Shown: one piece after another, positions 8,034 through 64,000 of the stretch
How the letters are laid out: every line of letters starts with the position of its first letter
Position numbering within the stretch: the stretch's first letter is position 1
Virus record (IMG/VR): IMGVR_UViG_3300024054_000362
Span: 124,001 to 188,000 of that record
Length of the DNA: 64,000 bases
Strand: one strand, 5' to 3'
Notes under the pieces: generated by a model
Told to the model about the DNA's origin: nothing
Seen by the model: only the letters and a program-made list of their open reading frames with translations
The model's database searches: none
Position numbers and translations under genes: made by a program

Positions 8034-8246
8034 ATGGCGAAACGAAAGCGCGCTCTTGCCGGCCTGATGGACACGGTTCGTGCGGGATGCCGCGTCACGA
8101 TCGTCGATCGTTTCGGCGCGCAACGAACGGGTCGTGCCGTCATGAAGGGACCGCACGGCTGGGTGTTGAATCTCGGAGGACGACACGGAACCCCTGGGAT
8201 CGCGAGCGCGGATAACATCGTCAAGGTCAGCTGTTCGAAGAGGTAA
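8034..8246 (+). CDS. small beta-rich basic protein, paralog of the N-terminal half of 53831-54346
   Basis: RVTIVDRFGAQRTGRAVMKGPHGWVLNLGGRHGTPGIA vs RVTIVTPQGQQRTGTAVMRSSHGGWVLNMGGKHGTPGIA; TAGGCT lies 6 nt before the ATG. Confidence 0.7.
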   Translation: MAKRKRALAGLMDTVRAGCRVTIVDRFGAQRTGRAVMKGPHGWVLNLGGRHGTPGIASADNIVKVSCSKR

Positions 8247-8255
8247 GCTCCGCGG

Positions 8256-8680
8256 ATGGCGACCGATTCAGAGATCGCGTGGGCGGCTGGCCTGTTCGAA
8301 GGCGAAGGTAGTTGCTACGGCACCGTACGCAGCGATCGTTACAACACGAGGCGAATCCGTATGAACTTGCGGATGACGGATCAAGATGTCGTTGAACGCT
8401 TCGCGAAGGTTGTCGGTGTCGGCTCCGTATACGGCCCCATTCAACACGTGCGCGCCAGCGACGGCGTCCGGTTGAAGGACGTGTACGAATGGGGAACGGG
8501 TAGTTGGCACGTCGTCGTTGATCTGTACGCGTGTTCAAGCCGTGGTTGTGCACACGACGGCGTGGACAATTTGAACACGCGCTTCAGACAGCAAAACCGA
8601 AGTCGCCGGTTCGGCGCGCACACAAACTTGGTCCCAGACAAAATTTCAACTACAAGCAACGTACCGAAGTGACGCGATGA
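8256..8680 (+). pseudogene. free-standing LAGLIDADG endonuclease, frameshifted near 8532
   Basis: IAWAAGLFEGEG motif; the natural continuation FKPWLCTRRRGQFEHAL resumes in another frame at 8534 and ends at TGA 8680. Confidence 0.7.
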
Positions 8681-50418: not shown

Positions 50419-51000
50419 ATGACGATCGAATCTCTCATCGTTGCGATCCTTGCCATCACGGGCACAGCAGCGCCGCACACGTCCAAGAATGCGCGCGTGC
50501 ACGCAGAGAGCGCACAGGCAGTCGCCACCGTCGATTTCCCGGTCGAAGTTCTCCTCGGTACGGCCTACGTCGAATCGCGCTTCTATCAGACGGCGCTGAG
50601 TCGGTTGGAGGATTGTACGGATCCGAAGGATCCTAAAACCTGCATTCGAAAGACCGGCGTGTGGGCCAGCCATGTACCGCCGCCGACGGCGCGACCGGAC
50701 TGGTACTGTGGGCCGCTACAGACGGGCGGCTGGGTCACGTGGGCCGAGTGTCAGCGGATGCGGACGGACGTGCTGTACGGTTACCAGCAGGGCGTGCGCG
50801 AGCTGACGAAGTGGTGGAACGATCCGAGCTGTTCGCGACTACCGGATGACGATCGGCTGCGTTGTACGCTTGCCGGACACAACGCCGGGTATGCAGGTGC
50901 GGCGAACTACAAGGTCTCGCCGTACGTTCGTGACGTGTTCAAGGCGCGCGATCGGATCGTGAAGATCACCGAGCACGAAGAGTTGAAGCCGGGTAGCTAG
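50419..51000 (+). CDS. lytic transglycosylase (SLT-like) with N-terminal hydrophobic signal
   Basis: AYVESRF (catalytic Glu), GPLQ, AGHNAG, YVRDV. Confidence 0.7.
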   Translation: MTIESLIVAILAITGTAAPHTSKNARVHAESAQAVATVDFPVEVLLGTAYVESRFYQTALSRLEDCTDPKDPKTCIRKTGVWASHVPPPTARPDWYCGPLQTGGWVTWAECQRMRTDVLYGYQQGVRELTKWWNDPSCSRLPDDDRLRCTLAGHNAGYAGAANYKVSPYVRDVFKARDRIVKITEHEELKPGS

Positions 51001-51326
51001 CGGCGCTTCTTGCGGCGGCTCTTGCGCTTGCGCGAGCGGCCGAGATTCGTGGGACAGAGACTGCCGTGGTAGAGCAGCGTGCCGGCAGGGTATCCACGGT
51101 TTTGCCGAGTCTGATTCCGCTCGGTGTACCAGTCGACGACCTTACGGTTCGTCGAGGACGAACACGGCACGTAGCATTGGATGTCGCCGCGCTGGCTCGG
51201 CTTCCCCGACGCCATCGCGACGTCGACGCACTCGCGCGTACTGAGGCCGTGGCGCTGCGCGGCGCGGCGCGCGCTTTTCATTGGGCCCTTGACGATCAAC
51301 GAGACGCTGTTCGCACGTGTCGCCAC
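50997..51326 (-). CDS. Cys-containing basic protein with LG-Arg tail, paralog of the C-terminal half of 53831-54346
   Basis: VSLIVKGPMKS...CV...DIQCYVPC...W...GTLLYHG. Confidence 0.7.
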   Translation of the reverse strand: MATRANSVSLIVKGPMKSARRAAQRHGLSTRECVDVAMASGKPSQRGDIQCYVPCSSSTNRKVVDWYTERNQTRQNRGYPAGTLLYHGSLCPTNLGRSRKRKSRRKKRR

Positions 51327-52356: not shown

Positions 52357-53730
52357 TCAGTGAAGAGAGTAGTTGACGATCTCACCGGGAGCGATCCAAC
52401 AAGCGCGACAGCCCTTGCCGTCCGGTCCGCCGAGACCTGGCGGTGCTACGGCTTTGCGACACGTGTGCTTCGCGTCTTCGGTCGCATACGCTTGGCAGTT
52501 CCACGTGTAGCGAGGATCGGGACCCGTCATCTTCGGCTCGAAGCGTTGGGCATGTTGATAGACGTACTGCTCGCGCTCCGGCGTCATGCCGCGGTTCTGT
52601 TCGACTTGCAGTACGACCGTCGCGCCCGCCCAGCCAGGACCGAGATGCTGTCCGACGGGGTCGTAGCCTTCGATGCGACGATTCCAGCCGGGACCGGGTT
52701 CGTTCACTTCGTACGCGCTCGGTCGGATGATGAAGTTGCGCGGATCGCGGTTGATGTCATTGACCGCGTCGGTACCCCATTCGGTCGCCCAGATGCGCGA
52801 CGGCGCCCAGAACGTGATGTCAGGAAGGCGATCTGCGATCATCTTCCACTGCTGCAGGTATTCAGGTTCGAAGAAGTCGCCCGAGTCGTGGATCCGAAAG
52901 AAGCGCCGACCGGTCGGTTCAGATGGCAGCGCTTGCGTCTTCTCGACGACCTTCTCTTCACCGGTCTCGGTGTTGACGATCTTCACCTCTTCCTTCACCG
53001 TGCCGCCGTTCAGCTTGTAGTCCGCGTTGTTGATCGCGTAGACCATTGTCTCGACGAACGCGGTCGACGGTCCGTACGGGCCTTGAACATTGAACTTGAT
53101 CGCTTGCCGCGCCCACAGGAACCGAAGGATCTGCGCGAACTGCACTTGGCCCGTCGAGTACTGTCCACCCTGCGCGTAACAGAACTGGCAGATGGCCTGC
53201 GCCAGGTTGACAGGCGCGTTGTACGGTCGACCGAGACCGTAGTTGACGTACTTCGCTGCTTTGCGCAGTGCATCTGCGGGAACGAGGCTTTGTCCAGCGA
53301 CCGCACCAGGGCACGCGCCACCGACTTGCGGCGGTCCTGCAGGGATGCTCCACGACGGCGTGTTCATCTTCGACGTCCATGACAGAAGTTGGTACTGCTG
53401 GACGTTGGGGTTGGTTGCAGGATTCCACGCCGGGCCAGGCCCGATCGGCTGATCGAGCACGACGTAGACGTTGCTCGGATCCTTGCCGTGCACGTTGCCG
53501 GGACGGACGACAAACTGCTTGGTCTCCAGACTACGGATGACGGCGTCACGTACGAACATCATGCCGAGCAGCCCAGCATGCGCATCCGCGAGAACAGCAC
53601 TGGGCGCAGGACAGGCCGGATGATCCTCACCGAGGTACGCGCCGTTCATCGACCCGACGCACATATCGTACGCACGTTCGATGGCGGTGACGTCTTCGGT
53701 GACTTCGAGGTGCGGAATGATGGCTGCCAT
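52357..53730 (-). CDS. GP88-like (radical-SAM-related) phage protein
   Basis: SWSIPAG...ACPG...ICQFCYA...FFRIHDSGDFF...FWAPSR...CRKAVA...CRACW. Confidence 0.7.
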   Translation of the reverse strand: MAAIIPHLEVTEDVTAIERAYDMCVGSMNGAYLGEDHPACPAPSAVLADAHAGLLGMMFVRDAVIRSLETKQFVVRPGNVHGKDPSNVYVVLDQPIGPGPAWNPATNPNVQQYQLLSWTSKMNTPSWSIPAGPPQVGGACPGAVAGQSLVPADALRKAAKYVNYGLGRPYNAPVNLAQAICQFCYAQGGQYSTGQVQFAQILRFLWARQAIKFNVQGPYGPSTAFVETMVYAINNADYKLNGGTVKEEVKIVNTETGEEKVVEKTQALPSEPTGRRFFRIHDSGDFFEPEYLQQWKMIADRLPDITFWAPSRIWATEWGTDAVNDINRDPRNFIIRPSAYEVNEPGPGWNRRIEGYDPVGQHLGPGWAGATVVLQVEQNRGMTPEREQYVYQHAQRFEPKMTGPDPRYTWNCQAYATEDAKHTCRKAVAPPGLGGPDGKGCRACWIAPGEIVNYSLH

Positions 53731-53830: not shown

Positions 53831-54346
53831 TCAGCGCCTCCGCTTGCGACGACGACGTGTGCCGTCGAGCGCGCTCAGGCACGAACCTCCGACGTACAGC
53901 AGCGAGCCGGGCGAACTCCAGGTCCGCTGCGTCGAACGGTTGGGACGGCTCGCCCTGAACCACTTGTCGAGGCGATCACGCGTCGATGGTGTGCAGGCGG
54001 TGAAGCACTGCACGTCCTTGCCGTGGGTCACGCACGACGACATCGGGATGCCGTAGCGCGCCGCCTCACGCTGGACGCTCTTCTTGGGGCCCTTCGCGAT
54101 CAGCGAGACGTGCTCGCGGCGCTTCGCGGTGCCGAGGCCGCGCGAGCCGCGCCCACCCTTGACTTTGACGGACACGACGTTGCGATCGTCGGCAATGCCG
54201 GGCGTACCGTGCTTGCCACCCATGTTGAGCACCCAGCCACCATGCGATGAACGCATGACGGCGGTGCCCGTGCGCTGTTGGCCTTGTGGCGTGACGATCG
54301 TAACGCGATCACCGGGCTTGATGACCTTGATCAGTGGATTCGCCAT
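53831..54346 (-). CDS. two-domain putative polyprotein joined at RGLG, with poly-Arg tail
   Basis: Halves match 8034-8246 and 50997-51326. Confidence 0.75.
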   Translation of the reverse strand: MANPLIKVIKPGDRVTIVTPQGQQRTGTAVMRSSHGGWVLNMGGKHGTPGIADDRNVVSVKVKGGRGSRGLGTAKRREHVSLIAKGPKKSVQREAARYGIPMSSCVTHGKDVQCFTACTPSTRDRLDKWFRASRPNRSTQRTWSSPGSLLYVGGSCLSALDGTRRRRKRRR

Positions 54347-54348
54347 GG

Positions 54349-54753
54349 CTAGCGCCTCGCTTTCCGACGGCGTCGACGGCCGAGACCGTTGTTGCGATTG
54401 ACGAGACAGTTCTCCGCGAACTCGCCCGCCGCTTTGCGGATCAGGCCTGCGTGCGACGGCGCGCTCGCACGACCGCCCGCGCTCTGGTGTGCGAGGTACT
54501 GACCGTAGTGCGTCATCATCTCGGCGTAGTCAGCCCACGCCGCACCGCACTTGCCGTTGCGCGACTTGTTGGTGACCATCGCGATCGAGTATCCGATGTC
54601 GTCGGACGCCTCGGTCATCTTCTTGGTGTGGATCGCCTCGGAGCTGCCAAGCCCGCGACGTGAACGCTTACGGCGTTGTGCATGGCCCTTCATACGACGC
54701 TCGTGCGCTTTGCGTTTGTGGAACGCGCGAGAACGCGTCTTCTTGTTCGCCAT
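54349..54753 (-). CDS. basic protein: Arg-rich leader-GLG-core-GLG-poly-Arg
   Basis: RRGLGSSE and NNGLGRRRRRKARR. Confidence 0.7.
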   Translation of the reverse strand: MANKKTRSRAFHKRKAHERRMKGHAQRRKRSRRGLGSSEAIHTKKMTEASDDIGYSIAMVTNKSRNGKCGAAWADYAEMMTHYGQYLAHQSAGGRASAPSHAGLIRKAAGEFAENCLVNRNNGLGRRRRRKARR

Positions 54754-54755
54754 GA

Positions 54756-55034
54756 CTAGCGCTTCGCCTTCCGGCGACGACGGCGACGACCGACGCCGCC
54801 GCCGACGTTGTAGCACTCGTTGCGGTTGCACTCGGCGATCGTCCGTTGCATGCCAGGCAGCCCTTCCTCGACGCGACAGACCGCGTTCGGGAACTGGCGC
54901 GAGCACGCGTGGCCGGCATCCATCGCTGCGCTGTATGACTTGTGGAGGCTGCGTCGATAGCCCGAAGGGCCGCTGACGACAAATCGTCCCGACGACGAGC
55001 CGAGTGACTTCCTACGACGACGTTTCTTCGCCAT
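54756..55034 (-). CDS. basic protein: Arg leader-LG-core-GVG-poly-Arg
   Basis: MAKKRRRRKSLG...GGVGRRRRRRKAKR. Confidence 0.7.
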   Translation of the reverse strand: MAKKRRRRKSLGSSSGRFVVSGPSGYRRSLHKSYSAAMDAGHACSRQFPNAVCRVEEGLPGMQRTIAECNRNECYNVGGGVGRRRRRRKAKR

Positions 55035-55036
55035 GG

Positions 55037-55276
55037 CTAGCGGCTCCTCTTCTTCTTCTTGCTCTTGCCCTTCTTGCGACGACGGCGCCCGAAGTTGACG
55101 GGGCACGCGCGCTCGTGGATGCGTGTGTCGACGTCGCCGACGTTGAGTCGGCGACGGCCGCCCGGGAGGATGACCGTGTGACGAGCGTCGACCTTGCGAC
55201 GCGTCGCCGTGATCGTCTCGGCGTCGAACGCGAAGCAGGCGCCGATCGGAAGCTGTCGGAACGTACGCGCTGGCAT
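55037..55276 (-). CDS. small protein with FG-poly-basic tail
   Basis: TGATG overlap; VNFGRRRRKKGKSKKKKRSR. Confidence 0.7.
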   Translation of the reverse strand: MPARTFRQLPIGACFAFDAETITATRRKVDARHTVILPGGRRRLNVGDVDTRIHERACPVNFGRRRRKKGKSKKKKRSR

Positions 55277-55539
55277 CAACGTCTCCTCTTTCGCGTGCGT
55301 CGACTGCGTCCGGCGATTTGGAGTAAACACACCGGACGAAGGCCGAAGGTCCGCTGGTACTTCTGCCGTAACTTGTCCTCCATCTTGATGCGTGCGTCGG
55401 TGCAGTCGGTCGCGGCCACGTCGACATAGACGTGTTCGGTCCCGACCGTCTTGACCTTGAGGCCTGCGCGACGAATCTTGCGACTCATCTCGACCACGGT
55501 GACGGGACCCGTGTGGACCTTCATTCGGAAGATCGGCAT
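55276..55539 (-). CDS. small protein with AG-poly-Arg tail
   Basis: MPIFRMKVH...QIAGRSRRTRKRRR. Confidence 0.7.
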   Translation of the reverse strand: MPIFRMKVHTGPVTVVEMSRKIRRAGLKVKTVGTEHVYVDVAATDCTDARIKMEDKLRQKYQRTFGLRPVCLLQIAGRSRRTRKRRR

Positions 55540-55598
55540 CAGCGACGCCTCCTGCGCGCACGCTTGCGTTTGCCGAGTCTGTAGGTAACGCCTACGGA

Positions 55599-55796
55599 CT
55601 AGCGACGGCGGCGCTTGCGCCAACGCGTGCCGCAGACCTTCGTGCCCCGCGCGGTGCGGATGCAGATCTTGCGACCCTTGCGGCGACCCTTGCGACCGCG
55701 GCGACGGCGACCGACGAGGGTGGGGAGAGCGCCCATGTGGCGACGACGACGGCGGCGACGCTTGCCGAGACCGTCGCCCTGATTCGAGGTGTCCAT
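55599..55796 (-). CDS. protamine-like Arg-rich protein (start may be 55919; possible readthrough to 55539)
   Basis: MDTSNQGDGLGKRRRRRRR... Confidence 0.65.
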   Translation of the reverse strand: MDTSNQGDGLGKRRRRRRRHMGALPTLVGRRRRGRKGRRKGRKICIRTARGTKVCGTRWRKRRRR

Positions 55797-61079: not shown

Positions 61080-64000
61080 TCAGTTGACTTCCGCCCAAGT
61101 TTTTCCGGCCTTGGCGTCGACGGGAAAATTCATCTTGTTGCCGTTGTACTCGACCTCGCGCGTGAAGCACTTCACGACGAGGGCCTTGAGCAGATCCTGA
61201 TCGTCTTCGTCGCACTCGAAGACTACGGCATCGTGGATCTGAAGGATCGGCCACGCGCCCTCGGGCAGGAGCGGCATGATATCCGCGAGCCCCAGGTTGA
61301 TAAGGTCAGCGCCCGACGCCTGAATCGGGAAGTTGACGACTTCGGTCAGGTCGAACTGCTTGATCGGAAAACATCGACGACGTCCGAGGATCATGCTTCG
61401 GATCTCGCCTTGCTGATCCGCCATCCGTTGCATGTCCTGGTGCCACTTGGTGACGCCCGGCATGCGGGTCTTCATCACCTGCACCATCTTGCCGATCATG
61501 CCGATGGTGACCTGCGGGTAGTCGCGGACGACGGCCTTCCACAACGTCTCGATCGAGCCGGCGTAGAACGCGCCGTACTCCGGGCGCTTGATCAGGTCGC
61601 GGCGGACCTTGCGTTCGTCGACAGGAACCGTGTCGAAGTCCGGCCAGACGATGCGCGCGAACTCGCTATGGATGTCCTTGTCCTTGTGGAAGATGTCGAG
61701 GAGGAACGGGTCACCTGACATGAGCGCGATCAGGCGTGCTTCGAGTTGCTTCGCATCGAAAGCGACGAACGCACGCCCGTACGGTGCGACCACCTGGCTA
61801 CGGAGGTTGGGGCGTCCCTTCTTTTTGTCGGCCTTGGGCCAGTTCTGTGCTTGTGGTCCTTCGGAGCGCCATCGTCCAGTGATGGCGTGGACGCTCCATC
61901 GTGGGTGAACACGCAGCCACGGATCGGCGAAGCCGTAACGGATCTTGCCGGGGATCGGTCGGCCTTCCTTGTCGAGGACCGGGCGATCGAGCATGCGTTC
62001 ACAGAACGTCGACAGGAGCTTTGCGTTCTCGCGGTAGTTGAGGAGCGCTTGGATTTCCGGGTACTGCGAGAACGCTTCGAGGACGTCTTTCTTTGTCGAG
62101 ATTCGACCACTGGCCGTCTGAAGACTGAGCGGCACACCGCAGGCCTTGAGGAAGGCCACGATGTGATCGCCCGAGTCGATCATGAAGTTGAACTTGCTAG
62201 CCTCGATCTCGCCGAGGCGTTTCGAAATACGTTCGTCAAGATCGATCGGATCGTGCTTTCGCGTACGCCGCGCCTGTTCGAAGGCGAGCCGTTCCTTGAA
62301 GCGCGCCAGGATCGTCGGATCCTGAATTTTGTCGTCCAGCTCTTTTTTGGCCGCATCGATGTTGGCGCGGAAGCCTTTGCGGAGTTGCCCGTTGATTTCT
62401 GGATCGATCGGGACGCCCTTCATGTGCATCACGCTGGCGGCGTGCGCCATCGCGAGATCCACCTTGTAGGTCTTCTCGGCGTTCGACTCCTTGATGATGA
62501 GCGCGATCGGACCTTCGATACGTGCCGTCGCAAGCGTGTCGCGTGCGTTGTAGGGCAGCAGCTCGTCGAGCGTTCCTTGACCATGGCGGTATTCGGCCTT
62601 CCACGGCGGAGCGGCGTAGAACTGCGTCAGGACACGCTGAAGGTTGTGTGCGAGGCCTGGGAACGCACTGTGATGCATGAGCATCGTGCAGTGGATTTCG
62701 CCGTTGATCTGAAAACCGTGACGTTCCAAGACAGGTACGTCGTAGATCCGGTTGTGGAAGATCTTGACGACGGACTCGTCGGCGAACAGTTTGTCGAGCG
62801 GTTCGAGAACCTCCGGGATGCACAGCTCCCACGCGATGCTGATCGCGCGCTCGAACGTGGCGAGCCCGAGCGCCGACATGTTGGCGTTGTAAGGTGAGAG
62901 CGCGGTGTGTTGCTTCGTGTTTTCGACGAAGGTCTCGGTGTCACACGCGAACCGACCTGAACGGTATGCGTCGACGACGAAGTCGGCGACGAGCTTCTTC
63001 GCCCGCTGCCAATCTTCTAGTTCGACCTGAATGTCGTCGGTGAACTTGATGTCGGCGCCCTGCGAGATCAGGTTCACCTTGGCCGTGTCGTAGAGCAGGT
63101 TCCAGAAGGCGAGGTCGACCGTGTGTGACCCACCACCGCCACTCGCACCGCCGCCACGAAGGATCGCAGCGGGGTGAATGCTCGGGATCACCGCACGCGT
63201 CCGTCCGCTGTTGTCGCAGTCGACCTCGTGGTACGAGCCCGCCATCTGCGTGATCGAGAACTTCTCGTTGCCAGTGAGTTGTTGGGCGGCGTGAGCCCCG
63301 AGGGCGAGGACGGGCACGCCGGGGAACTGTGCGATCTCTTGTTTGAGTCGGTCGCCACAAGCTTGACGTGCTTGCTTCTTGATGGCGTCGGAGGCGCCGT
63401 GCGGCGGTTGGCAGTTGTGAACGACGGCTCCGGGCGTGAGGAAGTTGTGCGTGCCTTCCACTTCGAGGCAGTACACGGTCGCGCCTTCGCCTTTTCGTCG
63501 GGGGCTCGTACAGACGCTCTCGGCCTGATCGTAAAAGGCCGCTGCTGGAATGGGCTCGTATGTTTGCGGGTCGTACTTGCCGCGATCTTCAGGTCGAAGT
63601 TTGTACGCCATCACAGGTGGAACGTAAGTCGCGATCGCAGCACTGAATCGCGCAGTCCCTTCGACCGTGAATCGGATACGGCCGCGCCGAACGCGGTTTT
63701 CGAAACCGCGTGCACGTAGTACTGCAGAGGCGTGAAGAAGATCTGGTTCGGGAAAGGCGACGCCACAAATCTCGGCGAGCGGACGGTGCCCGTTGCGGAT
63801 CTGCATGTACCCATCGTCTAGGTACCAGACGGCAAACAACAGCTCGTCCGCCGAAGCGAGAACAGTCGATGGGATTCGTTTCTTGCCTTCGGGGTAGAAG
63901 AGGTCGCGTGTTGCATGTCCCCATGCACCGGCAGCTGTACGGAACCCGTACTTAGCTTGCTCATTTTGTCGGGGTGGCTGTTGGAACAGTGACACGCCGA
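61080..64000 (-). CDS. polA: family A DNA polymerase with N-terminal UDG-like domain, intein-containing, 5' truncated
   Basis: CQPP...LALG...IHPAAILR (UDG-like); DTET exonuclease; DAKQLEAR, RDLIKRPEYG, QIHDAV polymerase motifs; frame open at the window edge. Confidence 0.93.
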   Translation of the reverse strand, partial: GVSLFQQPPRQNEQAKYGFRTAAGAWGHATRDLFYPEGKKRIPSTVLASADELLFAVWYLDDGYMQIRNGHRPLAEICGVAFPEPDLLHASAVLRARGFENRVRRGRIRFTVEGTARFSAAIATYVPPVMAYKLRPEDRGKYDPQTYEPIPAAAFYDQAESVCTSPRRKGEGATVYCLEVEGTHNFLTPGAVVHNCQPPHGASDAIKKQARQACGDRLKQEIAQFPGVPVLALGAHAAQQLTGNEKFSITQMAGSYHEVDCDNSGRTRAVIPSIHPAAILRGGGASGGGGSHTVDLAFWNLLYDTAKVNLISQGADIKFTDDIQVELEDWQRAKKLVADFVVDAYRSGRFACDTETFVENTKQHTALSPYNANMSALGLATFERAISIAWELCIPEVLEPLDKLFADESVVKIFHNRIYDVPVLERHGFQINGEIHCTMLMHHSAFPGLAHNLQRVLTQFYAAPPWKAEYRHGQGTLDELLPYNARDTLATARIEGPIALIIKESNAEKTYKVDLAMAHAASVMHMKGVPIDPEINGQLRKGFRANIDAAKKELDDKIQDPTILARFKERLAFEQARRTRKHDPIDLDERISKRLGEIEASKFNFMIDSGDHIVAFLKACGVPLSLQTASGRISTKKDVLEAFSQYPEIQALLNYRENAKLLSTFCERMLDRPVLDKEGRPIPGKIRYGFADPWLRVHPRWSVHAITGRWRSEGPQAQNWPKADKKKGRPNLRSQVVAPYGRAFVAFDAKQLEARLIALMSGDPFLLDIFHKDKDIHSEFARIVWPDFDTVPVDERKVRRDLIKRPEYGAFYAGSIETLWKAVVRDYPQVTIGMIGKMVQVMKTRMPGVTKWHQDMQRMADQQGEIRSMILGRRRCFPIKQFDLTEVVNFPIQASGADLINLGLADIMPLLPEGAWPILQIHDAVVFECDEDDQDLLKALVVKCFTREVEYNGNKMNFPVDAKAGKTWAEVN
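63414..64000 (-). mobile_element. intein with LAGLIDADG endonuclease domain (C-terminal part)
   Basis: AVWYLDDG block; VYCLEVEGTHNFLTPGAVVHN|C splice junction, Cys+1 at 63411-63413. Confidence 0.92.

What the first reader, a model, noticed from the sequence alone, without database searches (positions are those of the whole stretch)
53831..54346. Natural polyprotein: two domains that also exist as stand-alone genes are fused at a GLG linker
Seen: the N-terminal half (RVTIVTPQGQQRTGTAVMRSSHGGWVLNMGGKHGTPGIA) matches free-standing gene 8034-8246. The C-terminal half (VSLIAKGPKKSVQREAARYG...DVQCFTAC...W...GSLLYVG + Arg tail) matches free-standing gene 50997-51326. The junction is GGRGSRGLG|TAKRR. 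Inferred: this is independent internal evidence that GLG marks a processing site releasing mature modules.
Basis: partly seen in the sequence, partly recalled or inferred. Interest (0 to 1): 0.75.

Follow-up and report, generated by a model that had tools for sequence, protein, structure and literature searches.

The report
Mobile barrel domain fused to small phage protein
A small gene of an uncultured lake-water jumbo phage is a genuine fusion of a widespread, unnamed 60-residue barrel domain to a small basic protein, joined at a Leu-Gly hinge that marks module edges across this phage family; nothing yet shows the protein is cut there.

Summary
ORF 53831-54346 (-) encodes 171 aa. Its N-half matches ORF 8034-8246 (59% identity, E=6e-20). 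Its C-half matches ORF 50997-51326 (36%, E=2e-15). AlphaFold2 gives a five-strand SH3/Sm-like barrel, a disordered basic linker holding GLG, a ferredoxin-like domain and an Arg tail.

The fusion is real: it is identical in lake metagenomes from 2018 to 2025 and conserved in relatives of 83-92% identity. Equally close relatives carry the C-domain alone, starting exactly where GLG ends.

The gene lies in a variable, translationally coupled operon of small basic proteins between the helicase and a GP88-family gene. In six syntenic relatives the barrel occurs at most once per operon, on a different cargo (F, E or C), always followed by basic residues and Leu/Phe-Gly.

The barrel is a large virus-borne family absent from Pfam: 793 clusters, solo or inside proteins of up to 1181 aa. 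Other clades mark module edges differently (basic-Asn-Pro, z=28; GSAAR).

So GLG is a true module boundary. Cleavage is neither shown nor excluded, and I found no protease. The in-genome stand-alone genes are distant paralogues, not the fusion's parents.

The parts
53831..54346 (-). Fused gene (protein P0001, 171 aa): barrel, linker, ferredoxin-like domain, Arg tail
   Evidence: ORF list and translation. Conserved fused orthologues P0004, P0005, P0209-P0211. Identical in independent metagenome contigs.
54161..54346 (-). N-domain, residues 1-62: five-strand SH3/Sm/Tudor-like barrel with an invariant loop N-M-G-G-x-H-G-T-P-G
   Evidence: AF2 pLDDT about 95, strands 14-18, 24-32, 38-41, 49-52 and 57-61. 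13 invariant columns in 45 sequences. 793 cluster representatives at E<=1e-3. No Pfam or PHROG hit.
54113..54160 (-). Disordered basic linker, residues 63-78. GLG (residues 70-72) is encoded at 54131-54139.
   Evidence: pLDDT <50 at residues 66-74. GLG is kept in all six fused orthologues despite indels around it. The ACC codon of T73 stands where solo orthologues have ATG.
53888..54112 (-). C-domain (F family), residues 79-153: beta-alpha-beta-beta-alpha-beta ferredoxin-like fold with four conserved Cys
   Evidence: AF2. Family alignment of 29 sequences with nearly invariant C33, C42, C46 and C84. Only generic ACT/PII/RRM-like fold matches: Foldseek E>0.01 and VIA Z<=6.5.
53834..53860 (-). 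C-terminal Arg-rich tail TRRRRKRRR, preceded by Asp-Gly. Its last codons carry the Shine-Dalgarno-like GGAGG for the next start.
   Evidence: Sequence. Disordered in AF2. Stereotyped gene boundaries.
8034..8246 (+). Stand-alone paralogue of the N-domain (P0002, 70 aa), with a short basic leader MAKRKRALAG
   Evidence: In the domain tree it groups with other solo copies, away from P0001, with weak support.
50997..51326 (-). Stand-alone paralogue of the C-domain (P0003, 109 aa), from a different subfamily, ending NLG plus a basic tail
   Evidence: Its own orthologues are P0057 (89%) and P0058 (74%).
54349..55796 (-). Upstream part of the same operon: five small basic genes, A (55599-55796), B (55276-55539), C (55037-55276), D (54756-55034) and E (54349-54753). 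Each ends in Gly plus an Arg tail. D and E start with a basic leader ending in Leu-Gly.
   Evidence: Sequence and ORFs. The syntenic cluster in relatives has shuffled order and content. No Pfam family.
52357..53730 (-). GP88-family gene (PF17338), the conserved downstream neighbour of the cluster
   Evidence: Pfam E=9e-19. Same position in L004, L007, L019, L024 and L025, and in the distant L022.

Best explanation
P0001 is a natural gene fusion in a cassette-like operon of small, very basic phage proteins.

Shown: A portable 60-residue SH3/Sm-like barrel, with a short basic linker ending in Gly-Leu-Gly, stands in frame at the start codon of an F-family gene (a ferredoxin-like, four-Cys domain). 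The result is two independently folding domains on a flexible tether. In this family of lake-water jumbo phages the barrel occupies the position that short Arg/Lys leaders hold on other cassettes (M-A-K-R-R-R..x-L-G). It is found on different cargos in different phages. Leu/Phe-Gly is the hinge that sets every leader, barrel or Arg tail apart from the folded core.

Inferred: The barrel and the basic arms are alternative 'address' modules. They tether variable cores to one common, conserved partner, most likely nucleic acid or a conserved host or phage machine, judging from the invariant Gly/His loop and the polybasic arms. On this reading the fused protein works as a tethered two-domain protein, and cutting at GLG is not required for function. 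The stereotyped, repeated boundary DNA (Arg codons, SD, TAG, ATGGCGAA) probably drives cassette shuffling and made this fusion possible.
For: Homology of both halves. Two confident domains, a disordered linker and a low overall pTM of 0.45, meaning no packed interface.

The fusion is conserved at 83-92% identity and stable across 2018-2025 samples. Solo F orthologues at 78-93% identity start at the position after GLG.

The barrel is on F (ours, L019), E (L007, L024) or C (L025), or absent (L004, L017), in the same syntenic cluster. Leaders are interchangeable with the barrel: the E family always has a basic leader plus RGLG.

The barrel is solo in 42 proteins, N-terminal in 38, C-terminal in 43 and internal in 57, out of 180. 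That fits a general adaptor better than a removable propeptide.

In the genome, basic-basic-x0-2-Leu-Gly occurs 29 times against 16.8±4.1 in shuffles, and Gly precedes 14 of 53 basic runs against a 7.7% background. Boundary DNA is near-identical at several junctions. No protease family was found.
Against: The function of either domain is unknown. Fold matches are generic.

Short motifs conserved in otherwise variable, disordered linkers are unusual for passive tethers. They differ by clade: Leu-Gly here; basic-Asn-Pro 152 against 21.7, z=27, and GSAAR elsewhere. That pattern is what protease sites would look like.

The absence of a recognisable protease means little. Only the large terminase subunit, and no capsid, portal or maturation-protease gene, was recognised in this phage.

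The domain tree is too weakly supported to prove repeated independent fusions.
Confidence: 0.5

Rival explanations
1. Processed mini-polyprotein. A phage or host endopeptidase cuts after hydrophobic-Gly, here G72|T73. This releases the barrel and the F core, and likewise trims the basic leaders and Arg tails of the other cluster proteins. Other phage clades use basic-Asn-Pro or GSAAR sites in much longer multi-module proteins.
For: The motif lies in a disordered, accessible linker. GLG is kept in all fused orthologues despite neighbouring indels. Leu/Phe-Gly is present at the barrel-cargo junctions of at least seven cargo types. Natural N-termini of leaderless F and D orthologues coincide with the residue after the Gly. 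Punctuation motifs are clade-specific with extreme enrichment (NP 231 against 51, z=28; six GSAAR at module edges in P0077). A 739-aa NP-punctuated barrel protein occupies the same position upstream of GP88 as this operon. For precedents, see Closest known systems (T4/SPN3US, adenovirus, polyvalent proteins).
Against: No cleavage product has been observed. No protease of families S78, S77, C48, S14, S49 or JAB is detectable. The cluster lies in the replication region, not with packaging or structural genes. The coincidence with the solo start codon is expected from any fusion at a start codon. Pro after Asn is a poor P1' residue for most proteases, so the NP motif may be structural. Whole-genome enrichment of the Leu-Gly motif is modest (z about 3).
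Confidence: 0.3
2. Selectively neutral or recent accidental fusion. Recombination between near-identical gene boundaries happened to join a barrel cassette to F. The fusion is tolerated, with no functional meaning for the junction.
For: Boundaries are stereotyped and repeated, which favours illegitimate or homologous exchange. Cluster order and content vary between close relatives. Equally close relatives do without the fusion.
Against: The fused form persists in orthologues down to 83% identity and over seven years of sampling. The same kind of fusion recurs with other cargos, always with the same junction motif. The reading frame, GLG and both domains are intact in all six fused orthologues.
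Confidence: 0.12
3. Artefact: two adjacent genes merged by an assembly or sequencing error, such as a lost stop codon or a frameshift.
For: None beyond the prior that small adjacent genes are sometimes merged.
Against: A solo-type boundary (stop, two bases, ATG) cannot be read through in frame, and the fused junction has a different sequence. The identical protein is on 11 contigs from JGI, ENA and Logan assemblies. Independent runs show no substitutions or indels in the parts of the stretch they cover. Five diverged fused orthologues exist.
Confidence: 0.01

Closest known systems
Polyvalent proteins of phages and conjugative elements (Iyer, Burroughs, Anand, de Souza, Aravind 2017, PMC5512222)
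   Same: Modules occur solo in some elements and are strung together in others. There are many uncharacterised, element-specific domains. Some are proposed to be released by proteolysis. The paper itself draws the analogy to RNA-virus polyproteins. Two long relatives carrying the barrel also carry RadC or DUF2958, a typical polyvalent-protein setting.
   Different: P0001 has only two small domains. It has no peptidase, no LPD or other hallmark Pfam domain. It lies in the replication region rather than beside structural or transfer genes. Of 72 long barrel-bearing proteins scanned, almost none has any known domain.
Capsid-targeting leaders and propeptides cut by prohead proteases (T4 internal proteins; phiKZ/SPN3US ejection proteins; PMC3012670, PMC5694885, PMC10052503)
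   Same: Small, often basic proteins carry a removable N-terminal leader that ends in a short consensus site. Many proteins of one phage share the same site.
   Different: Those sites end in Glu (L/I-x-E, A-x-E; from my own knowledge and those papers), not in Leu-Gly. Those genes encode virion proteins. Here virion association is unknown, and no S77 or S78 protease was found.
Adenovirus core proteins pVII and pX/Mu, processed by adenain at (M/I/L)-x-G-G|x or (M/I/L)-x-G-x|G (my own knowledge, not tested here)
   Same: Arg-rich, DNA-condensing peptides are set off from the rest of the precursor by hydrophobic/Gly sites.
   Different: A eukaryotic virus. The site spacing differs (Leu at P4, against P2 here). 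No adenain/ULP-like protease was detected (PF02902).
Ordinary gene fusion/fission ('Rosetta stone') pairs
   Same: Two proteins that are separate in some genomes are joined in others, with the junction at the former start codon.
   Different: Here one partner is a promiscuous, unusually conserved domain that moves between several cargos inside one operon. The junction carries a conserved motif.
SH3-like small barrels (Sm/Lsm, Tudor, KOW) and ferredoxin-like ACT/PII/RRM domains
   Same: The same topologies: Foldseek probability 0.99-1.0 to Lsm and Tudor for the barrel, and ACT/PII/RRM-like matches for the C-domain.
   Different: There is no significant sequence or structure score (E>0.01, Z<=6.5). 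No family motifs are shared. Function cannot be transferred.

Membership tests
Proteolytically processed viral polyprotein or propeptide system | Independently folding modules in one ORF, separated by accessible linkers | tested here: met
   AF2: barrel at pLDDT about 95, linker <50, C-domain 85-90, pTM 0.45. The halves are homologous to separate genes.
Proteolytically processed viral polyprotein or propeptide system | The same short motif at the junctions of many substrates of one virus | tested here: met
   Leu/Phe-Gly after a basic stretch is found at the barrel-cargo junctions of at least seven cargos and at the leader-core junctions of the D and E families. Genome-wide it occurs 29 times against 16.8 in shuffles, z=3.
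Proteolytically processed viral polyprotein or propeptide system | A cognate protease encoded by the virus (or a defined host protease) | tested here: inconclusive
   No hit to PF04586, PF03420, PF02902, PF00574, PF01343 or PF14464 in the genome. PHROG scans of 87 ORFs found no protease, but apart from the large terminase subunit they found no structural genes either.
Proteolytically processed viral polyprotein or propeptide system | Cleavage products with the predicted new termini | not testable with these tools
   Needs proteomics. The phage is uncultured and known only from lake-water metagenomes.
Polyvalent proteins (Iyer et al. 2017) | Hallmark domains (zincin-like peptidase, LPDs, ArdC-N, RadC and others) combined in one polypeptide | tested here: not met
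   P0001 has no Pfam family at E<=1. Among 72 long barrel-bearing relatives there is one RadC, one DUF2958, and a few zinc ribbons or HNH domains.
Polyvalent proteins (Iyer et al. 2017) | The same domains also occur solo in related elements | tested here: met
   42 of 180 barrel proteins are solo. The F family is nearly always solo.
Polyvalent proteins (Iyer et al. 2017) | Gene sits with virion-structural or DNA-transfer genes (delivered with the DNA) | tested here: not met
   The cluster lies between the helicase/DNA polymerase and GP88, on the same strand, in ours and in six relatives.
T4-type capsid-targeting leader | Leader of 10-20 aa ending in the prohead protease consensus (L/I-x-E), with a gp21-like protease present | tested here: not met
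   Leaders end in Leu-Gly, not in Glu. PF03420 is absent.
SH3-like barrel superfold (Sm/Tudor/KOW) | Five-strand, strongly bent antiparallel barrel of about 60 residues | tested here: met
   AF2 strands. Foldseek probability 0.99-1.0 to Lsm 6tfl and Tudor 2xk0, but E>0.01. Atlas structural neighbours with TM 0.7-0.8 are viral hypothetical proteins. Membership holds at fold level only. No KOW, LSM or Tudor Pfam family was among the hits (no Pfam hit at all).

The most novel reading that the evidence does not exclude
The short motifs that punctuate these proteins are recognition sites of still unidentified, clade-specific phage (or hijacked host) endopeptidases. The motifs are Leu/Phe-Gly in this phage family and basic-Asn-Pro or GSAAR in others. 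On this reading a large group of uncultured tailed phages expresses batteries of small basic effectors either as operons or as true polyproteins. The conserved barrel would be a common carrier or address module. This would be a DNA-phage counterpart of RNA-virus polyprotein expression.
Probability: 0.25. Interest if true: 0.8.

Novelty: new variant of a known kind. Interest (0 to 1): 0.5.

Why it matters
Three things would follow if the reading is right.

1. It defines a large, strongly conserved, almost exclusively viral protein domain with no entry in Pfam or PHROGs. There are 793 clusters at 50% identity, and only 2 hits in about 186,000 prokaryotic species genomes. This gives a handle on a sizeable piece of phage 'dark matter'.

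2. It shows a cassette-like operon in which one domain hops between cargos at a fixed hinge. Stereotyped boundary DNA may drive the shuffling. This is a compact natural example of how multi-domain phage proteins are assembled from solo genes.

3. The clade-specific punctuation of module edges makes the old question of whether DNA phages use polyprotein processing for non-structural proteins directly testable, because the predicted cut sites are exact.

Tried and rejected
- Common origin of the two halves. MAFFT repeatedly aligned the F family onto the barrel, but hhalign gives probability 0.1%. Rejected.
- Sequence searches of solved structures with both profiles: nothing below E=0.05.
- Fold searches (PDB, BFVD, VIA-wide, ESM Atlas): only generic SH3-like and ferredoxin-like matches.
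- Cultured-phage search: no megablast or tblastn match for the locus or for P0001.
- Looking for a maturation protease or capsid gene, to test whether capsid proteins share the Leu-Gly site. Seven Pfam families were absent. PHROG scans of 87 ORFs recognised replication genes, RNR, terminase, a vWA/ATPase pair and many HNH genes, but no head genes. That test could not be done.
- Deriving the codons for L-G-T from a mutated stop-spacer-start (CTC GGC ACC against TAG TC ATG). The alignment shows about 7 of 10 matches plus one indel. This is too weak, and the E-family GLG cannot have arisen that way. Not adopted.
- Arg tails as a mere by-product of embedded ribosome-binding sites. This explains only the last three or four codons. 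Tails also occur where no gene follows closely (gene A, P0003). Partly rejected.
- Tree of the barrel, to prove independent fusions. 15 of 26 inner branches are unsupported. I use it only as a hint.
- A profile scan of one genome per species found the barrel in only two MAGs, a Solibacteraceae and a Lysinibacter. This gives no firm host.
- No complex prediction was run, because no specific binding claim is made.

Full report
**Setting.** The window is bases 124,001-188,000 of a 221,422-bp IMG/VR virus record rated complete. GC is about 62%. The locus is held identically in lake-water metagenomes from 2018 to 2025. Recognisable genes around the finding are replicative: a family-A DNA polymerase with an intein, a DEAD/Helicase_C_2 helicase and a GP88-family protein. 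Elsewhere there are RNR, terminase and many HNH endonucleases. No cultured phage matches the locus.

**Observation.** ORF 53831-54346 (-) encodes 171 aa.
- Residues 5-60 align with the 70-aa product of 8034-8246 (+) at 59% identity, E=6e-20.
- Residues 74-160 align with the 109-aa product of 50997-51326 (-) at 36% identity, E=2e-15.
- Profile searches of the whole genome find exactly two copies of each domain.
- The halves are unrelated to each other.
- The exact protein is on 11 contigs from three assembly sources.
- Contigs of independent runs match the stretch wherever they cover it without a single difference, and one (run X1) spans all of it.

**Anatomy.** AlphaFold2 with a 50-sequence alignment gives four parts:
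- a five-strand barrel (residues 14-61, pLDDT about 95);
- a disordered linker (pLDDT <50 at residues 66-74);
- a beta-alpha-beta-beta-alpha-beta domain (residues 79-153, pLDDT 82-89 over residues 81-130, falling to about 55 at the loop before the last strand);
- a disordered Arg tail.

The overall pTM of 0.45 indicates no packed interface. The C-domain modelled alone on 29 family members has the same topology. Fold searches return only generic neighbours: Lsm, Tudor and KOW-like barrels, and ACT/PII/RRM-like sandwiches. Four Cys are nearly invariant in the C-domain family. The barrel has 13 invariant positions, concentrated in the loop N-M-G-G-x-H-G-T-P-G.

**Relatives of the fused gene.** Five fused orthologues (83-92% identical; P0004, P0005, P0209-P0211) keep GLG although residues next to it are inserted or deleted. 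Equally close proteins (78-93%; P0006-P0010, P0208) are the C-domain alone. They begin MAKRRE where the fused form reads GLG|TAKRRE. The DNA alignment shows ACC in place of ATG, with the barrel cassette lying between the upstream stop and this codon. The wider F family (about 25 clusters) is otherwise always solo, and nearly all members end in Leu/Phe-Gly plus a basic tail. The in-genome stand-alone genes are distant paralogues. P0003 belongs to another F subfamily with its own orthologues. P0002 is 52% identical to the fused barrel, whereas barrels on a different cargo in other phages are 80-82% identical.

**The operon.** Upstream on the same strand lie five more small genes, A-E (54349-55796). 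Each ends in Gly followed by an Arg-rich tail. D and E begin with a basic leader ending in Leu-Gly. Genes are translationally coupled through a stereotyped boundary (..AAG AGG AGC CGC TAG YC ATG GCG AA..), in which the last tail codons are the Shine-Dalgarno sequence of the next gene.

The syntenic cluster (helicase, thymidylate kinase, methylase, cluster, GP88) was read in six relatives:

| Phage | Gene order before GP88 (N~ = barrel fused to the next cargo) |
|---|---|
| this window | A-B-C-D-E-[N~F] |
| L019 | A-E-C-D-[N~F] |
| L004 | A-x-C-D-E-F |
| L017 | A-..-D-F |
| L007 | ..D-[N~E]-F |
| L024 | A-x-B-C-D-[N~E]-z |
| L025 | A-F'-x-E-x-[N~C]-D |

The barrel therefore occurs at most once per cluster, and on different cargos. 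Each time it is followed by 8-15 basic or small residues and then Leu/Phe-Gly. The E family always starts with a basic leader plus RGLG. In L025, protein D lacks the leader and begins MASDRF, where others read SLG|SSDRF. The hydrophobic-Gly is thus a genuine module boundary, confirmed by natural N-termini in two families.

In the genome, basic-basic-x0-2-Leu-Gly occurs 29 times against 16.8±4.1 in shuffles. Gly precedes 14 of 53 basic runs (26% against 7.7% Gly content). 23 of 357 predicted genes have Arg tails.

**The barrel family.** A profile search of 1.84 billion representatives finds 793 proteins at E<=1e-3 and 567 at E<=1e-10, from 66 to 1181 aa. Of 180 examined, 42 are solo, 38 carry it N-terminally, 43 C-terminally and 57 internally. 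It has no Pfam or PHROG model. Atlas neighbours are viral hypothetical proteins. It was found in only two of about 186,000 species genomes. Partner regions are almost entirely unannotated: one RadC, one DUF2958 and a few zinc ribbons in 72 long proteins. This places the family near the 'polyvalent protein' theme (PMC5512222) without making it a member.

In these long proteins the edges are marked differently. Asn-Pro occurs 231 times against 51±6.5 expected (z=28), mostly after basic residues (152 against 21.7). It lies a few residues before and after the barrel. P0077 has GSAAR at six module edges. One such protein, P0204 (739 aa, 16 Asn-Pro), sits directly upstream of a GP88 gene, the position of our operon. 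Asn-Pro is not enriched in our phage.

**Interpretation.** What is shown: a real, conserved fusion of a mobile barrel to an F-family core at its start codon; a disordered basic tether; and a hinge motif that marks module edges throughout this phage family.

What is inferred: the barrel and the basic leaders are interchangeable address modules that bring variable cores to a common partner, and the fusion acts as a tethered two-domain protein (confidence about 0.5).

Conserved, clade-specific motifs in disordered linkers look like protease sites, and precedents exist (T4, SPN3US, P1 DarA/DdrB). Against it:
- no cleavage is observed;
- no protease was found;
- the genes lie in the replication region;
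- the match between GLG and the solo start is expected of any start-codon fusion.

A neutral accident (about 0.12) is disfavoured by persistence and recurrence. An artefact is excluded.

**Verdict.** The finding is a new variant of a known kind: modular, fusion-prone phage proteins. It brings an unnamed, widespread domain and an unexplained punctuation code, both worth experimental follow-up.

Noticed in passing
Proteins P0076-P0206 (relatives), e.g. P0204 in L022:8001-10220: Long proteins carrying the barrel are punctuated by Asn-Pro, usually after Lys/Arg: 231 NP against 51±6.5 in shuffles (z=28). The element N-P-E-L-L-V-V-x-N-P recurs. P0204 has 16 NP in 739 aa. The cause is unknown: cleavage sites, helix caps or recombination scars.
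   Followed up: partly
P0077 (783 aa): Six copies of G-S-A-A-R stand at module edges (residues 151, 237, 302, 502, 583, 660), with duplicated modules between them. This is a third type of boundary motif.
   Followed up: partly
window 53831-55796 (-) and loci L004, L007, L017, L019: Gene boundaries are stereotyped (..CGG AAG GCG AGG CGC TAG YC ATG GCG AA..). The last three or four Arg/Lys codons of each tail double as the Shine-Dalgarno of the next gene. About 30 nt are near-identical at several junctions, a likely substrate for cassette shuffling.
   Followed up: partly
window 55599-55796 (-): Gene A encodes a 65-aa protamine-like protein. More than half of its residues are Arg/Lys, with G-D-G-L-G followed by a run of Arg. 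It is conserved at the head of the cluster in all relatives read.
   Followed up: no
window 52357-53730 (-); L007:1097-3550, L019:2033-4486, L024:5761-8235: The GP88-family gene next to the cluster carries an intein with a LAGLIDADG domain in three relatives but not here. The DNA polymerase in the window (61080-63995) also holds intein and LAGLIDADG segments. Intein invasion suggests GP88 is an essential, conserved enzyme of unknown function.
   Followed up: no
window 54349-54753 (-): The start of gene E is ambiguous. Public gene calls start at the internal Met (114 aa, P0212). The upstream ATG, which follows the usual TAG-TC-ATG-GCG-AA boundary, gives 134 aa with a 34-residue basic leader.
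   Followed up: no
whole genome (G000), 23 of 357 predicted genes: C-terminal Arg-rich tails are a genome-wide habit, including on larger and membrane-like proteins (for example genome 8708-9208, 94828-95772, 159726-160694). Several other genes start with M-A-K-R-R-R..L-G.
   Followed up: partly
L023:2097-2594: In another metagenomic contig a 634-aa barrel-bearing protein (P0085) is followed by a gene with a BubE domain (PF20137), from the bacterial ubiquitination-like operon family.
   Followed up: no
genome 76608-78917 (L011:16608-18917) and 105593-106687: A 769-aa protein is 33-34% identical to the vWA-domain proteins of Ackermannviridae-like phages (LIMEstone1, phiA8-29). A MoxR-like ATPase is also present. 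These are the only clear links to cultured phages seen.
   Followed up: no
window 8256-8672 (+): The ORF just after the solo barrel gene contains a G-L-F-E-G-E-G-S stretch reminiscent of a LAGLIDADG motif but has no Pfam hit. It may be a degenerate homing endonuclease.
   Followed up: no
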